Origin: Guillardia theta CCMP2712
Lineage: Eukaryota; Protista; Cryptophyta
NCBI RefSeq assembly: GCF_000315625.1
Contig: NW_005434665.1
Location: 1,004,796-1,068,795, forward strand
DNA: 64,000 nucleotides
Direction: 5' to 3'
This document shows, piece after piece, positions 52,476 through 57,548 of this stretch. The position numbers and the translations under genes are program-made. The notes under the pieces were generated by a model. The model worked only from the letters and a program-made list of their open reading frames with translations. It searched no databases and was not told the origin of the DNA. The first letter of the stretch is position 1, and each line of letters begins with the position of its first letter.

Positions 52476-54329
52476 ATGGCACTTCGAGTGCTTCGCCAGC
52501 ACAAGGGTCTGGGATGGAGGCTTGTCAGGGCAGGACCAAGGTACCTCTCCTCTGACAAGCCTCGGCACCTGGATCAACTTCGACCTGGGACCATTTCTGC
52601 GCAGGTGATGAATGGATTCGTGTGGAATGTTAGTGATAAATCGAGTCCAGATCCCCTTCGGAGACGACAAACAGTACAATTCAGTTGTTCCAGCCATTTA
52701 TCCGTCTTCTACTTTCGTTAGAGATCAGAATGGAACCAACATTGCAGGTCAGGAGTGGGGAGTGGTCTATCAAGTCGATGAGTTGCAAGCAGGCAAGATC
52801 TATGCTCGGGATGACAACCCAACAGTGCTTGCAGCTGAAGGCACCATCAGAGAGCTGGAGTTCGGCGCAGATGCTCTCTTGTTCTCATCTGGAATGTCGG
52901 CAGCCACCGCAGTCTTCAAGGTAAGTCACCCCCATAGCCTCCTCTGTGCGCTCATGGAGGGAAACAGATACTTCGGCCTGGTGACCATGTCATTGTTCCA
53001 CGAGTTATGTACTGGGCGTTGAGGGGATGGATCATGGATTTCGCGAAAAGATGGAAGATCGAGGCAGCATCGTCTTCTTACGCTTGTTCGCTGGTCTTAA
53101 TCTGTTGCAGGTGAAAGCTCTGGACTTTGGAGAACCCTTCGACAAGAACAAACTCCGCTCGGCCTTGTCCACTCGGCCAAAGTTGGTCTGGCTCGAAACG
53201 CCAGCCAATCCGAGTAAGGCCCTTGAATCCTGCTCCTCTCTCTCGCCCATGATAGTCTTGCAGCCTGGTCGGTCTCGGACATATCCGAGATCTCAAGCAT
53301 GGCACACGACATTGGTGCATTCTGCGTTGTGGACAGCACTGCTGCGACGCCAGTGCTCAGCCAGCCTCTAAATTTGGGAGCCGACATTGTGATGCACTCG
53401 GCAACGAAATACCTGAACGGACACAGCGACGTGCTGGCGGGGGTTCTCGTGGCGAATCGCAAGATGGCGAACTCGTTGTTGTGGAAGAACATTCGGAATG
53501 TTCGGCGGAGTGAAGGATGCTGCCTTTCTTCCTTCGACGCTTGGCTGCTGCAACGAGGGCTGCGAACAGGTGTGATAGATCATGCTGAAAGCAACGCGTT
53601 TCTCACTGGTGATCGAGCAGTGCACTTGCGCGTTCGAACCCAGAGCAAGAACGCCCTTGATATAGCAAAGCACATGGAAAAGTTAGACGGTGTCAAGGTG
53701 CTCTATCCCGGACTCCCGTCCTTTCCAGGGCATGAAGTGGCAAAGCGTCAGGAAAGCTGAAGACATAAGGCCAAACTTGGACATTGACATGCAATGCAGA
53801 TGAAAATGGGATTTGGAGGAATGCTCTCTTTACGATTTGAGGTTTCAAGTTTTGTTACCCATACCTAGACTTTATTTGAGATTCGATATGCAGGGAGGGA
53901 AGGAGCAGGCACTTGCGTTCTTAAACGCATGCAAGGTATGTCCCATATCCCCAAGATTCGCTTCATATCAAGCACGAGCTTTTCTTTATTCGCATGTGCA
54001 TTCTTAAACCCTGTATTCACTTGGTGTCAAAACGTCAGCTGTTCAAGAATGCAACGTCACTGGGAGGAGTTGAAAGCCTCATCGAGCACAGGTACACGAA
54101 CACAGACTGTGAGAACGTTCCATGACTGCTAGTTGCAGAGCCAGCGTCGAAGGGAAATCAAGTCCCGTTCCAGACGATCTGTGAGTGAATAGCTGATGAA
54201 GATCGATGCGCAGACTGATGAATGTGACGAAGGCTGAGACTGTCCATCGGTATCGAAGAACGTGATGATTTGCTTCGAGACCTCCACGATGCATATCTAG
54301 TAGCGGTCAAAAACAAAACCGTGAAATGA
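52476..54329 (+). CDS. Cys/Met metabolism PLP enzyme (cystathionine gamma-synthase/lyase family), likely mitochondrial presequence
   Basis: VVPAIYPSSTF, YARDDNPT, FSSGMSAA, WLETPANP, VDST, HSATKYLNGHSDVLAG (PLP lysine), VLYPGL, ATSLGGVESLIEH, RLSIGIE; Arg-rich, acid-free N-terminus. Confidence 0.92.
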
Positions 54330-54397: not shown

Positions 54398-54859
54398 TCA
54401 AACACCACGTACTATTGTAATGTCACGCATTTCCCTCCGAGCACAGACATATTCTCCCGAGATCACAGTAAATATCGTTGCTAATATGTTGCAAAACCAC
54501 CAAACCCAGTGAGTTGGAAGTCCGTCATAAAGAAAGCAAATCAATATATGAAATCCATAGAGCGTCGTCCCAAAATCAAGACATTTCTTAGCCCTCTCCA
54601 CCACCACATATAGAAACCCGACATCACAGACTGCACATAGAAAAACTGCAAAAACAGTAGCCCATGCCAGCCTTGTTGACATGTTCTCAAATACGTTTGA
54701 TGTAAAGAACTGATCTAGTGAGATTGGCACTCCCATCAAAGAATCCATCAAGAAGAAAGAGGCGCCAAGTGCGAGGTAGTGCAAAGCCTGCATGACGCAC
54801 ATCTGAGATATGATCAACTGAGCATCGAAATGCTCTCTGCCATAGAACGTTCCGCTCAT
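54398..54859 (-). CDS. SYS1: SYS1 Golgi integral membrane protein
   Basis: FDAQLIISQMCVMQALHY, VVERAKKCLDFGTTL..FH, PTHWVWW, GEYVCARREMRDI. Confidence 0.92.
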   Translation of the reverse strand: MSGTFYGREHFDAQLIISQMCVMQALHYLALGASFFLMDSLMGVPISLDQFFTSNVFENMSTRLAWATVFAVFLCAVCDVGFLYVVVERAKKCLDFGTTLYGFHILICFLYDGLPTHWVWWFCNILATIFTVISGEYVCARREMRDITIVRGV

Positions 54860-55471: not shown

Positions 55472-57548
55472 TTAGTAAATCTTATACACGCTGGTGGGAT
55501 CCGAGCGACAGATTGGACATGGCCTTGAAGCCGCTCCTTCCTTGTGGTTCTCACAGAGACATTTATGTCCACAGGGGATGAGCGCCCACATGGCCTCTCG
55601 TTCCAAGCAGATGACGCAGAGCTGGCTATCTATGTCTATCTCATCCTCTCTTAAACTCTCTGCAACGGCTGCGTCATGCTGTTGCTGAAGCTTTCTATGC
55701 AAGTCGCTAAAACGTGGCCGCTCTGACTTCTGCTCCCTCCAACATTCCAGCATGATACTATACACAGCTGCAGGGCACGAAGGGGGGCTCGGAAGTCGCA
55801 CACCACCAAGTACCTTGGATCCCACAAGCGAATCGTCCGTGACGGTGCAATACGGAACTTTCCCGTACGTCCAGATCTCCCACAAAGTCACACCAAACGC
55901 CCATACATCGCTCTTCTCCGAGTACTGCCTTCTCTCGATGCTCTCCGGTGCCATCCATCGGATTGGGCGAGTCGTCGACCCTGCCGTACTGAAACTCGCT
56001 GCATATCTCTCTCCGTACCCGCGCGCGGACATGACAGACAACCCGTAATCAGCGATCTTCACATTCACATCCAAGTGATTCTGTGCATTCAGACGGAACA
56101 CAAGCACGTTCCTCGCTGCCAGGTCCCGATGCACGACCTGATGCAGAGAGAGCTGTACCATCCCGTCGCAGACCTGCCTCGCCACCTGCAGCTGCACCAG
56201 TAGACTGAGAGTCTTGCGTTCCTCTGCGAGGCTAGATAACACGACATCCAAGGAGCCCTGAGATGCAAAGTCCGTCACCATGCAGTAGTCGCAAGAACCT
56301 GGCTCAATTGTGATAGCAAGAAGGCGAAGGAGATTCGGGTGGAGCCCCAAGTGCTGGAAGATCTTGACCTCCTGCTCGAACTCCTCCCTCCTCCCAGTGG
56401 ATCCGCTGCCACGGATTCGTTGGATAGCTACTTCAGAGCTGCCTCCATTCGGCTGCTGCCATCGAGCCTTGTAGACGAGCTTGAAGGAGCCTGAGCCGAT
56501 CTGCCGCACATCGGTGAAGGCTTCGAAGTTGACCGACGGGATGCCACGCGAAGGCTAAAGAACAAAATGTCAAAGACATCCAAGCCATATAGAGACGGTA
56601 ACCTGGGACACAACGACATGTTGCTCCGTCTCCTTTAGCTCCTTTCTCTCAACACTGTTCGTCTCACGCACTTCACTTTTTGAGGAAAGAACGTTTGAAG
56701 TTTCACATTCAATTTCAATGCATCTCGCAGCTGTCGCAGCTTCACGATCCGAGAACTTGCCCTGGATTCCTCGAGAATCACTAGCAAATGTAGAGGACTT
56801 TCTATATTTTCTGTAGACCAACAAGAGAGCCACGAGCACAGTCGGAATAACGACTGTGATCACAACGATTGTTGTCACACTCGACTTGCTAGGGCTGGCT
56901 GTCGAAGTTGGGATTCGTGCTGCTGCTGGTGATTGAAATGGGGGTGGTTGAATCAAAAACAACATCTGAAAAACATGACATCAATATAGATAGATTGAAA
57001 AGGTGTCAACCACCTTGATGATCATCACAATCAGTTCCACTCGCACATGGATTCAAGTTGGCGTCCATGATAGTAAAATTAGGCCATGACAGATGATAGC
57101 ACGTCAGATTGTTGCCTGTCAATCTCAAAGTGATAAGCGAAGACAAACTAGTGAAAGACTGGGAGGGAATGCAGGAAAGCCTGTTGTAGCTAAGATAAAG
57201 ATACTGCAAGCTCGAGAGCCCGTCGAAGATCCCAGCTGGCAGACTTTCCTGATAGTTGTTTCCAAGGGATAGGTTGTTTTGGTCTAGATGCAGAAACTGC
57301 AAGCTAGAGAGCCCGTCAAACGTTCTATCCATTATGTTCCGAATACCCATTAAATTCAAACACAATCTTTTGTAACCCCGCATATCAGTTCCACAGTCAC
57401 CTCCACAGATTCCCTTCCTCGACAACAAACCCTCACCCGAGATGTGAAACGTGCAGTTTCCACAGCTCACGCTGCCTGCTGCCTCGGTCTGCCTTCCCCA
57501 GCCTCCAAGTAACATCAAAAGCACACACATCCCCAGCACTCGCTTCAT
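55472..57548 (-). CDS. LRR receptor kinase with tyrosine-kinase signatures and C-terminal RING finger
   Basis: Signal peptide MKRVLGMCVLLMLLGG; LRRs (LPAGIFDGLSSLQYLYLSYNRL); TM IVVITVVIPTVLVALLLVY-RKYRK; kinase GSGSFK, HRDLAARN, DYG, RPIRWMAPE, SDVWAFGV; RING CVIC...PCGHKCLC..H...CPICR. Confidence 0.9.

What the first reader, a model, noticed from the sequence alone, without database searches (positions are those of the whole stretch)
55472..56520. Receptor tyrosine-kinase-like domain with WNK-style relocated catalytic lysine, fused to a RING E3 ligase
Seen: beta3 reads VAIQ (no Lys), while the Gly-loop reads GSGSFKLVYK; the catalytic loop HRDLAARN and P+1 loop RPIRWMAPE are tyrosine-kinase type; DFG is DYG; a RING finger follows directly. 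Established: WNK kinases lack the beta3 Lys and use the Lys in GSFK, but they are Ser/Thr kinases. Inference: an independently evolved 'with-no-lysine' tyrosine kinase receptor in a non-metazoan, with phosphorylation and ubiquitination output on one chain.
Basis: partly seen in the sequence, partly recalled or inferred. Interest (0 to 1): 0.8.

Follow-up and report, generated by a model that had tools for sequence, protein, structure and literature searches.

The report
Tyrosine-kinase-like receptor with relocated lysine plus RING
A cryptophyte-alga gene encodes a tyrosine-kinase-type enzyme whose essential ATP-binding lysine has moved to the glycine loop, as otherwise known only from WNK kinases, and which is fused to a ubiquitin-ligase RING finger; the moved lysine is conserved across a whole protist family rather than being a one-off mutation.

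Summary
The minus-strand ORF 55472-56554 encodes a kinase domain reading GSGSFKLVYK, VAIQ, HRDLAARN, DYG and RPIRWMAPE, followed by an IAP-type RING.

It is a family trait, not a private mutation or a read error:
- Among 88 full-length homologues, all 65 with a Lys at the third Gly-loop glycine lack the beta3 Lys.
- All 22 with Gly or Ser at that position keep the beta3 Lys.
- On a tree built without those columns, the relocated-Lys state lies on one side of a branch.
- That Lys is one of 11 invariant positions, alongside the HRD His and Asp.

The domain is tyrosine-kinase-type by three published motif criteria. Its best sequence and fold matches are EGFR, ACK1 and FAK, not WNK, so the relocation is convergent.

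Members come from cryptophytes (Guillardia, Hanusia, Hemiselmis) and from many marine eukaryote contigs. They carry a RING or a U-box.

A signal peptide, LRRs and a TM segment lie upstream. The exon 1-2 junction of this copy is unresolved, but a Guillardia paralogue has LRR cap, TM, kinase and RING in one ORF.

Kinase activity, Tyr specificity and E3 activity are untested. I found no published description. First readers of this scan noted two more such genes elsewhere in the same genome.

The parts
57014..57548 (-). Exon 1: start codon, signal peptide (MKRVLGMCVLLMLLGGWGRQTEA), Cys-rich N-cap, leucine-rich repeats and a Cys-containing C-cap.
   Evidence: The ORF is. Pfam LRR_8 scores 62 bits. 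The ATG and the donor site were located. The Guillardia paralogue L001 4214-4840 has the same layout.
56926..57013 (-). Intron 1, with uncertain boundaries. The 48-nt GT..AG version (57013-56966) breaks the frame. In-frame versions end so that exon 2 starts at 56925, 56922 or 56919.
   Evidence: enumerate the splice options. One search gave no junction reads.
56603..56925 (-). Exon 2: Ser/Thr/Pro-rich stalk, a transmembrane helix (TIVVITVVIPTVLVALLLVY, about 56813-56872), a YRKYRK stop-transfer motif and the juxtamembrane region.
   Evidence: ORF 56570-56965 is. It joins exon 3 in frame through a 48-nt GT-AG intron at 56555-56602.
55712..56518 (-). Tyrosine-kinase-type catalytic domain.
   Evidence: Pfam PF07714 scores 229 bits. 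Solved tyrosine-kinase chains (Src-Abl ancestor, JAK, ROR2, Eph, ABL) match with whole-sequence E-values of about 1e-47 to 1e-40; the best EGFR domain match is 1.9e-34. The AlphaFold2 model has mean pLDDT 90.7. The best Foldseek matches are EGFR, TRK, FAK, ACK1 and PYK2.
56480..56482 (-). Gly-loop Lys (GSGSFK), at the position of the third glycine of GxGxxG. This is the proposed relocated catalytic lysine.
   Evidence: It is invariant in all 65 relocated-type homologues and is one of 11 invariant columns in A1. It aligns over the Gly of EGFR and ACK1.
56420..56422 (-). beta3 Gln (VAIQ), in place of the canonical VAIK lysine.
   Evidence: It aligns with the beta3 Lys of EGFR and ACK1. Across the clade this position is L 45, Q 9, I 3, A 3, V 2, M 2, S 1 and never K.
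56108..56131 (-). Catalytic loop HRDLAARN (tyrosine-kinase type).
   Evidence: In A1, H142 and D144 are invariant, and R143, A146, R148 and N149 are at least 90% conserved.
56042..56050 (-). DYG motif, the Mg-binding Asp in a DFG variant.
   Evidence: D169 is at least 90% conserved and G171 is invariant. The RING subclade has DYG; the U-box subclade has DFG.
55943..55966 (-). P+1 loop PIRWMAPE (tyrosine-kinase type).
   Evidence: P197 and E204 are invariant.
55508..55618 (-). IAP-type RING finger. The spacing is C-x2-C-x11-C-x-H-x3-C-x2-H-x8-C-x2-C, with His at ligand 6 in this copy.
   Evidence: Pfam PF13920 scores 41 bits. The closest solved RINGs are cIAP2, MEX3C, CGRRF1, cIAP1 and XIAP.
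55472..55507 (-). C-terminal tail RSDPTSVYKIY plus the stop codon. The ending (K/R)I(F/Y) is conserved in the family.
   Evidence: One search shows tails of 11-13 residues ending RIF, RIY or KIY in most members.

Best explanation
The gene encodes a cryptophyte member of a protist family of tyrosine-kinase-type kinases in which the ATP-anchoring lysine has moved. It has left strand beta3 (VAIK becomes VAIQ, VAxL and similar) and now sits at the third glycine position of the Gly-rich loop on strand beta2 (GxGxFK). This is the same solution used by WNK kinases, but it arose independently on a tyrosine-kinase scaffold.

The rest of the catalytic machinery is kept: the alphaC Glu, the HRD Asp, the catalytic-loop Asn and the DYG Asp. 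The most likely reading is therefore an active kinase whose Gly-loop Lys pairs with the alphaC Glu and the ATP phosphates.

The kinase is followed by a long helix and a C-terminal IAP-type RING. In some relatives the RING is replaced by a U-box. One chain would thus both phosphorylate and recruit an E2 for ubiquitination, most plausibly auto- or substrate ubiquitination coupled to dimerisation and activation.

In this copy and in a Guillardia paralogue, the module sits behind a signal peptide, an LRR ectodomain and one TM helix. That makes it a cell-surface receptor.

Shown: the motifs, the covariation, the family membership, the fold and the architecture of the paralogue. Inferred: catalysis through the Gly-loop Lys, Tyr specificity, E3 activity, and the exon 1-2 junction of this copy.
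For: - Motifs and domains are.
- The covariation is perfect and reciprocal: 65 of 65 with a Gly-loop Lys lack the beta3 Lys, and 22 of 22 with Gly or Ser there keep it.
- The tree was built with the trait columns removed. The relocated state needs only 2 changes, one of them being the single 'neither' row, against a shuffled mean of 20.5.
- In 53 relocated-type sequences that share as little as 33% identity with the window protein, K25 is invariant. So are G22, H142, D144, G171, P197 and E204.
- In the same set, E62 (alphaC), N149 and D169 are at least 90% conserved.
- The beta3 replacement itself drifts (L, Q, I, A, V, M, S), as expected if that site has lost its role.
- All three tyrosine-kinase-specific motifs are present: HRDLAARN, P-x-R-W-M-A-P-E and G-x-R-L. 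The criteria are those quoted in PMC3019232 and PMC3937382.
- The best sequence matches and fold matches are tyrosine kinases.
- The N-lobe on its own hits EGFR, ACK1 and BRAF, not WNK.
- The WNK precedent, in which a beta2 Lys supports catalysis, is documented in PMC13686953, PMC4718504 and PMC5346417.
- The RING is closest to the cIAP and XIAP RINGs, and its ligand positions and C-terminal aromatic tail are conserved.
- Paralogue L001 has LRR C-cap, TM, kinase and RING in one ORF.
- Family members occur in cryptophyte transcriptomes (Hanusia, Hemiselmis), so the family is transcribed.
Against: - There is no biochemical evidence for any member.
- I could not read model coordinates, so the Lys-Glu geometry is unchecked.
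- Only 3 RNA reads fell on this gene, and none crossed a junction.
- The obvious first intron breaks the frame.
- Several Guillardia paralogues have degraded catalytic loops: HRGLGARN, HRELAARS and HGD. Part of the family may therefore be non-catalytic.
- The first Gly of the loop is often lost in relatives.
- Putative tyrosine kinases outside Holozoa have rarely been shown to be Tyr-specific.
Confidence: 0.6

Rival explanations
1. The family consists of pseudokinases. Loss of the beta3 Lys abolished phosphotransfer, and the domain serves as a nucleotide-binding or scaffolding module that regulates the attached RING or U-box. The Gly-loop Lys is conserved for nucleotide or partner binding rather than for catalysis.
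For: - The canonical VAIK Lys is absent in all 65 members.
- Some Guillardia copies also have damaged HRD or DYG motifs.
- The first Gly-loop glycine is frequently lost.
- Pseudokinases are common among receptor-type kinases (PMC3019232; PMC4718504).
Against: - The catalytic Asp of HRD is invariant.
- The catalytic-loop Asn, the DYG or DFG Asp and the alphaC Glu are at least 90% conserved in sequences that share as little as 33% identity with the window protein.
- Such retention is not expected once catalysis is lost.
- The same Lys placement supports full activity in WNK.
Confidence: 0.22
2. The kinase is active through the relocated Lys but is not tyrosine-specific. It would be a Ser/Thr or dual-specificity kinase, like the TKL kinases, that merely carries tyrosine-kinase-like motifs.
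For: - Non-holozoan 'TKs' appear to have origins separate from the metazoan-type tyrosine kinases (PMC4342544).
- Their specificity is debated (PMC3019232).
- Pfam PF07714 covers both TK and TKL kinases.
Against: - All three motif criteria used to separate TK from TKL and Ser/Thr kinases are met and are conserved in the family.
- The 60 best solved-sequence matches listed and the 50 fold matches listed are all tyrosine kinases.
- One relative carries an IRS-type PTB domain.
Confidence: 0.25
3. The Gln at beta3 is a private mutation, a pseudogene lesion or a sequencing error in an otherwise ordinary kinase.
For: CAA (Gln) is one base away from AAA (Lys). The exon 1-2 frame problem could hint at decay of this copy.
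Against: - The pattern is shared by every Guillardia and Hanusia relative and by 65 homologues in all.
- Contigs of two DNA runs agree with the window at both codons.
- The 360-codon last exon is open, and all catalytic and RING residues are intact.
Confidence: 0.01
4. It is a divergent true WNK-family kinase, or it acquired a WNK N-lobe by recombination.
Against: - The catalytic loop is HRDLAARN and the P+1 loop is PIRWMAPE. These are tyrosine-kinase type, not the HRDLKxxN Ser/Thr type.
- DYG stands where WNK has DLG.
- The 37-residue N-lobe query finds EGFR, ACK1 and BRAF, with no WNK chain among the 60 hits listed.
- Whole-domain hits are all tyrosine kinases.
- Pfam finds no WNK-type accessory domains.
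Confidence: 0.02

Closest known systems
WNK (with-no-lysine) Ser/Thr kinases, e.g. WNK1 Lys233
   Same: The beta3 lysine is absent and a lysine sits in strand beta2 of the Gly-rich loop (GSFK). The alphaC Glu, the HRD Asp and the metal-binding Asp are retained. In WNK this arrangement is catalytically competent (PMC13686953, PMC4718504, PMC5346417).
   Different: - The rest of the domain is not WNK-like: the catalytic and P+1 loops are tyrosine-kinase type, and DYG stands where WNK has DLG.
- The beta3 residue is Leu, Gln, Ile and similar instead of Cys.
- No WNK accessory domains were found.
- The N-lobe does not retrieve WNK structures.
- This is convergence, not membership.
Metazoan and holozoan tyrosine kinases (EGFR, ACK1, FAK/PYK2, Eph, Abl)
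   Same: - They are the best sequence and fold matches.
- The motifs HRDLAARN, PxRWMAPE and GxRL are shared.
- The activation loop contains tyrosines.
- The layout is receptor-like, with an ectodomain and a single TM helix.
   Different: - The catalytic Lys is relocated.
- The clade has its own signature: a hinge Ala, a 6-residue insert between beta7 and beta8, and DYG.
- A RING or U-box is fused at the C-terminus.
- The host is a cryptophyte.
- Whether it belongs to the holozoan 'group A' tyrosine kinases was not tested.
Putative tyrosine kinases of non-holozoans (Phytophthora PITG_02400 and PITG_02529, Chlamydomonas, Entamoeba)
   Same: They are non-metazoan kinases called tyrosine kinases on the same motif criteria (PMC3019232, PMC3937382).
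   Different: The papers I read report neither a relocated lysine nor an E3 fusion for them. I did not compare their sequences here.
Cbl RING E3 acting on activated receptor tyrosine kinases (own knowledge)
   Same: A RING E3 is coupled to a tyrosine-kinase receptor. The likely outcome is receptor or substrate ubiquitination after activation.
   Different: In animals the E3 is a separate protein, recruited through phosphotyrosine. Here the RING is on the same chain, and it is IAP-type rather than Cbl-type (IAP E-values near 1e-6, Cbl near 0.02).
Plant kinase-E3 fusions: KEG (RING plus kinase) and U-box kinases of the PUB family (own knowledge)
   Same: A protein kinase domain and a RING or U-box E3 domain are on one polypeptide.
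   Different: The plant proteins have Ser/Thr-type kinases with a canonical beta3 Lys, a different domain order (KEG has the RING at the N-terminus) and no LRR-TM receptor layout. No homology beyond the domain level is implied.
IAP-family C-terminal RINGs (cIAP1/2, XIAP, BIRC7), MEX3C, MYLIP, MUL1
   Same: - They are the best RING matches.
- They share the Pfam family PF13920.
- The RING is at the extreme C-terminus, with a short tail ending in an aromatic residue. In the IAPs this tail belongs to a dimeric, E2~Ub-activating RING (own knowledge).
   Different: There are no BIR domains. In this copy ligand 6 is His instead of Cys. Dimerisation was not tested.

Membership tests
Tyrosine kinase (TK) group of eukaryotic protein kinases | Subdomain VIb catalytic loop HRD(L/I)AARN, instead of the HRD(L/I)KxxN of Ser/Thr kinases. 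| tested here: met
   HRDLAARN lies at 56108-56131. A146, R148 and N149 are at least 90% conserved in the clade. The criterion is as stated in PMC3019232 and PMC3937382.
Tyrosine kinase (TK) group of eukaryotic protein kinases | Subdomain VIII P+1 loop with the conserved first Pro: P-(I/V)-(K/R)-W-x-APE. | tested here: met
   The window reads RPIRWMAPE. P197 and E204 are invariant.
Tyrosine kinase (TK) group of eukaryotic protein kinases | The pattern G-x-R-(L/M), described as TK-specific in PMC3937382. | tested here: met
   The window reads GGVRLPSPPSCP. The family consensus is GERLxxPxxCP.
Tyrosine kinase (TK) group of eukaryotic protein kinases | The closest characterised relatives, by sequence and by fold, are tyrosine kinases. 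| tested here: met
   All 60 best PDB sequence hits are tyrosine kinases. The 50 Foldseek hits listed are all EGFR, TRK, FAK, ACK1 or PYK2.
Tyrosine kinase (TK) group of eukaryotic protein kinases | Canonical beta3 (VAIK) lysine. | tested here: not met
   The window reads VAIQ. None of the 65 clade members has a Lys there. This is the point of the finding.
Tyrosine kinase (TK) group of eukaryotic protein kinases | Phosphorylates tyrosine. | not testable with these tools
   This needs biochemistry.
Tyrosine kinase (TK) group of eukaryotic protein kinases | Placement inside the TK clade, against TKL and other groups, in a phylogeny with curated reference kinases. | not tested
   No curated TKL, WNK or other-group reference sequences were available as tool outputs. 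The tree holds only search hits.
WNK kinase family | No beta3 lysine; the catalytic lysine is in strand beta2 of the Gly-rich loop. | tested here: met
   The WNK feature is as described in PMC13686953 and PMC4718504.
WNK kinase family | Overall kinase-domain affiliation with the WNK/NRBP branch, which is Ser/Thr type. | tested here: not met
   Tyrosine-kinase-type loops are present, and PF07714 scores far above PF00069. No WNK chain appears among the 60 hits listed for the N-lobe query or the whole domain.
WNK kinase family | DLG motif leucines forming the chloride site. | tested here: not met
   The motif is DYG, or DFG in the U-box subclade. The chloride site is as described in PMC5346417.
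IAP-type RING E3 (Pfam zf-C3HC4_3) | A profile match above the curated cut-off, with eight zinc-ligand positions in cross-brace spacing. | tested here: met
   PF13920 scores 41.1 bits against a cut-off of 27. The spacing is C-x2-C-x11-C-x-H-x3-C-x2-(C/H)-x6-8-C-x2-C across the family. In the window and in P0001 ligand 6 is His, which can also bind zinc. The best solved matches are cIAP2, MEX3C, CGRRF1, cIAP1 and XIAP.
IAP-type RING E3 (Pfam zf-C3HC4_3) | E2 binding and ubiquitin transfer. | not testable with these tools
   This needs an autoubiquitination assay.
Single-pass LRR receptor kinase architecture | Signal peptide, LRR ectodomain, one TM helix and a cytoplasmic kinase on one chain. 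| tested here: inconclusive
   All the elements lie co-linearly on the minus strand. The 48-nt first intron breaks the frame, and the in-frame alternatives lack RNA support. The feature is met in the Guillardia paralogue L001, where LRR C-cap, TM, kinase and RING share one ORF.

The most novel reading that the evidence does not exclude
This would be a second, independent invention of the WNK solution, a catalytic lysine moved from beta3 to the Gly-rich loop. It occurred on a tyrosine-kinase scaffold and has been maintained for a long time across a diverse protist family that is always wired to a RING or U-box E3. If these enzymes are active, the relocation is a repeatable evolutionary route rather than a WNK oddity. 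It may then serve the same purpose proposed for WNK: freeing the beta3 pocket for a small regulatory ligand such as an anion. That would give marine algae receptor kinases that integrate an extracellular ligand, an intracellular ion signal and self-ubiquitination.
Probability: 0.45. Interest if true: 0.85.

Novelty: new variant of a known kind. Interest (0 to 1): 0.7.

Why it matters
A 2026 review still describes the WNK placement of the catalytic lysine as unique (PMC13686953). That placement is the structural basis proposed for chloride sensing.

A second, convergent family with the same relocation on a different kinase scaffold gives a natural comparison. It allows a direct test of why the lysine moves and which other changes must accompany it. 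Clade-specific candidates are the hinge Ala, DYG and the beta7-beta8 insert.

The finding also adds a sizeable family of tyrosine-kinase-type proteins with modular N-terminal domains outside Holozoa: LRR-TM, PTB, ankyrin and coiled coil. This bears on the origin of phosphotyrosine signalling.

Finally, it shows a recurrent hard-wiring of kinase and E3 ligase on one chain. Automated annotation would label these proteins pseudokinases, and the Guillardia gene models cover only the last exon, so the family is easily overlooked.

Tried and rejected
1. Giant-virus origin of the metagenomic relatives.
   - Contigs L002-L005 looked dense in ORFans.
   - However, L061 and L063 carry ribosomal protein L11, WD40 genes and a split dynein heavy chain, so these are eukaryotic nuclear contigs.
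   - An IMG/VR scan with the family profile found 55 viral kinase loci. All 28 that I inspected were canonical, with no Gly-loop Lys and no RING.
   - Two of those loci (L006, L016) look like retroviral oncogene kinases of animals and were not pursued.
2. WNK-derived N-lobe. Rejected by the N-lobe search.
3. RNA support for the gene model. Only 3 reads of the one raw RNA run fell on the gene, with no junctions. Their orientation fits a minus-strand transcript under the usual stranded-library convention. The other runs are DNA.
4. The simple three-exon model with two 48-nt introns is out of frame at intron 1. I enumerated the alternatives but could not choose between them.
5. Source organisms of P0079 and P0032 could not be determined.
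6. Kwon et al. 2019 (PMC6997932) could not be read. Seven literature searches found no description of this family.
7. Model coordinates are not exposed, so I could not measure the Lys-Glu distance in the AlphaFold2 model.
8. I did not run the large representative-protein search.
9. Read laying was given 2,501 letters.
Full report
**What is there**

The minus strand of the window carries an ORF from 56509 to 55472, 345 aa as listed. Its frame stays open upstream to a splice acceptor at 56554.

It encodes a protein kinase domain followed by a RING finger. Pfam PK_Tyr_Ser-Thr scores 229 bits against 112 bits for the generic Pkinase model. zf-C3HC4_3 scores 41 bits against a cut-off of 27.

- GSGSFKLVYK, with the Lys codon at 56480-56482.
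- VAIQ, with the Gln codon at 56420-56422.
- HRDLAARN at 56108-56131.
- DYG at 56042-56050.
- RPIRWMAPE.
- The RING at 55508-55618.

HMMER alignments to EGFR and ACK1 place the Lys over the third glycine of GxGxxG and the Gln over the canonical beta3 lysine.

Contigs of two DNA runs agree with the window at both codons. These runs may be the assembly's own source.

**Organism and gene structure**

The best hits are Guillardia theta CCMP2712 (78% identity) and Hanusia phi, so the window comes from a cryptophyte alga.

Upstream on the same strand lie, in order:
- an exon with a start codon at 57548, a signal peptide, a Cys-rich cap and leucine-rich repeats (LRR_8, 62 bits);
- an exon with a Ser/Thr/Pro-rich stalk, one hydrophobic helix (about 56813-56872) and a basic stop-transfer motif.

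The second intron (56602-56555, 48 nt, GT-AG) joins exons 2 and 3 in frame.

The obvious first intron (57013-56966, also 48 nt) does not keep the frame. In-frame GT-AG alternatives of 88-94 nt exist.

Only three RNA reads of the one raw RNA run fell on the gene, and none crossed a junction. The receptor architecture of this particular copy is therefore probable, not shown.

It is shown for a G. theta paralogue (L001, JH992972). There one ORF runs from the LRR C-cap through the TM helix, the kinase and the RING, and an LRR exon with a signal peptide lies just upstream. The public gene models of the Guillardia paralogues are 'partial' and cover only the last exon.

**Is the missing lysine a private accident? 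No**

I aligned the window protein with the 120 listed homologues and read the two positions in the 88 sequences that cover the whole kinase domain.
- All 65 with Lys at the third Gly-loop position lack the beta3 Lys. That position holds L 45, Q 9, I 3, A 3, V 2, M 2 and S 1.
- All 22 with Gly or Ser in the loop have the beta3 Lys.
- One sequence has neither.

On a maximum-likelihood tree built with the two motif regions removed, the relocated state occupies one side of a branch. It needs 2 changes, counting the single 'neither' row, against a shuffled mean of 20.5. This is compatible with a single origin followed by long maintenance.

In an alignment of 53 relocated-type sequences, identity to the window protein goes down to 33%.
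- The Gly-loop Lys (K25) is one of only 11 invariant columns. The others include H142 and D144 of HRD, the G of DYG, and P197 and E204 of the P+1/APE segment.
- The alphaC Glu (E62), the catalytic-loop Asn (N149) and the metal-binding Asp (D169) are at least 90% conserved.

The replacement residue at beta3 drifts freely. A conserved new lysine, a drifting old site and an intact remaining catalytic apparatus are what an active enzyme with a relocated lysine predicts. They are hard to reconcile with a decayed pseudokinase, although a few Guillardia copies are clearly degraded (HRGLGARN, HRELAARS).

The clade has further signatures:
- a hinge Ala where canonical relatives have Met;
- a six-residue insert between beta7 and beta8;
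- an extra Gly after alphaC;
- conserved R208 and D241.

**What kind of kinase**

Three motif criteria are used in the literature to separate tyrosine kinases from TKL and Ser/Thr kinases: HRD(L/I)AARN, the first Pro of P-x-x-W-x-APE, and G-x-R-(L/M) (PMC3019232, PMC3937382). All three are met here and conserved in the family.

All 60 best matches among solved-structure sequences are tyrosine kinases: EGFR, a Src/Abl ancestor, JAK, ROR2, Eph and Abl.

An AlphaFold2 model built on the family alignment is confident, with mean pLDDT 90.7 and pTM 0.83. Only the activation loop, residues 177-193, is disordered. Its best Foldseek matches are EGFR, TRK, FAK, ACK1 and PYK2.

A 37-residue query covering only beta1-beta3 finds EGFR, ACK1 and BRAF, with no WNK chain among the 60 hits listed.

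The relocation is therefore convergent with WNK, not inherited from it. That a beta2 lysine can replace the beta3 lysine in catalysis is established for WNK1 Lys233 (PMC13686953, PMC4718504, PMC5346417).

**The E3 part**

The RING is closest to cIAP2, MEX3C, CGRRF1, cIAP1 and XIAP.

Across the family the spacing is C-x2-C-x11-C-x-H-x3-C-x2-C-x6-8-C-x2-C. A tail of 11-13 residues follows and ends in (K/R)I(F/Y).

In the window copy and its closest paralogue the sixth ligand is His, which still binds zinc.

From my own knowledge, IAP-type RINGs act as dimers, and the C-terminal aromatic residue helps to activate E2~Ub. A long helix (residues 282-309 of the model) links the kinase to the RING. 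I therefore infer that dimerisation, driven by ligand in the receptor forms or by coiled coils in cytoplasmic forms, switches on both trans-phosphorylation and the RING. This is inference only.

A basal subclade carries a U-box (PF04564) instead of the RING. The kinase-E3 coupling is thus a property of the family.

**Spread and modularity**

Named sources are the cryptophytes Guillardia, Hanusia, Hemiselmis andersenii and Baffinella, the green alga Pyramimonas obovata (U-box form), and a EukProt transcriptome labelled 'Hpha'. Many marine and freshwater metagenome contigs also carry members. Culture contamination cannot be excluded for the non-cryptophyte sources.

N-terminal modules vary:
- LRR-TM in the window and in L001;
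- Cys motifs plus a charged coiled coil in Hanusia transcripts;
- an Ephrin-receptor-like Cys-rich piece, an IRS-type PTB domain, or ankyrin repeats.

I briefly suspected giant viruses because some contigs looked rich in ORFans. Neighbouring ribosomal, WD40 and dynein genes show eukaryotic nuclear DNA instead. The viral kinase loci I inspected from the IMG/VR scan (28 of 55) are all canonical.

**Comparison with what is known, and novelty**

It works like WNK at the ATP site, like a receptor tyrosine kinase in overall design, and like the RTK-Cbl pair or the plant kinase-E3 fusions in output.
- It fails membership of WNK. The catalytic loop, the P+1 loop, DYG and the overall similarity all point elsewhere.
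- It meets every tested TK criterion except the canonical lysine.

Seven full-text searches and nine papers read in part turned up no description of a relocated-lysine tyrosine-kinase-type family or of these kinase-RING proteins. One key survey, Kwon et al. 2019, could not be read, so prior mention cannot be excluded.

First readers of this scan flagged two more such genes on other pieces of the same genome (s1-431626, s1-431731). This agrees with the at least ten Guillardia paralogues seen here.

I rate it a new variant of a known kind.

**Verdict**

Catalysis through the Gly-loop lysine has about 0.6 confidence, with a pseudokinase reading as the main rival at about 0.2. Tyrosine specificity, E3 activity and the first splice junction remain to be shown.

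Read laying received 2,501 letters. The costly representative-protein search was not used.

Noticed in passing
window 56926-57013: The neat 48-nt GT..AG intron between the LRR exon and the TM exon shifts the frame. It would give a roughly 200-aa secreted LRR protein ending at a TAG. Only longer introns of 88-94 nt keep LRR and kinase on one chain. This copy may use the longer intron, may make two products, or may carry a 1-nt lesion.
   Followed up: partly
L004:9247-11332 and L061:8599-10690: In metagenomic eukaryote contigs, a ubiquitin-fold ORF (PF00240, 92 bits) lies 14-42 bp upstream of a relocated-lysine kinase-RING gene, on the same strand. The adjacency is seen on contigs from several samples. 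It may be one gene: ubiquitin-like, kinase and RING together.
   Followed up: partly
L064:1863-3590 (P0032): One family member carries an IRS-type PTB domain (PF02174, 25.5 bits) in front of the relocated-lysine kinase and the RING. This hints at phosphotyrosine reading in the same lineage. The source organism is unknown.
   Followed up: no
L001:4214-6038 (Guillardia theta JH992972): The public gene model of the closest paralogue is 'partial' and covers only the 345-aa kinase-RING exon. The signal peptide, the LRR exon and the TM segment upstream are unannotated. This paralogue and P0004 read HGD instead of HRD.
   Followed up: partly
P0010, P0013, P0014 (Guillardia theta paralogues): Some paralogues have degraded catalytic motifs (HRGLGARN with a gap after DY; HRELAARS with DYGRW) while keeping the Gly-loop Lys. 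They are likely pseudokinase or pseudogene copies within the expansion.
   Followed up: no
window 54398-54859 (-) and 52612-53760 (+): Two neighbouring genes were identified. One is a SYS1 Golgi membrane protein (PF09801, 115 bits). The other is an intron-split Cys/Met-metabolism PLP enzyme (PF01053, 140 bits for the larger piece).
   Followed up: partly
L006 and L016 (IMG/VR): Two short viral contigs retrieved by the kinase patterns look like retroviral oncogene kinases of animals, one Abl-like and one Kit/Fms-like. Both have canonical lysines. They are irrelevant to the finding and were not analysed further.
   Followed up: no
window 57080-57480: Another first-reader note (s1-435007) calls the LRR ectodomain VLR-like with a recombination scar. 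I confirmed only that LRR_8 repeats with Cys-rich caps are there and that the paralogue L001 has more repeats.
   Followed up: partly
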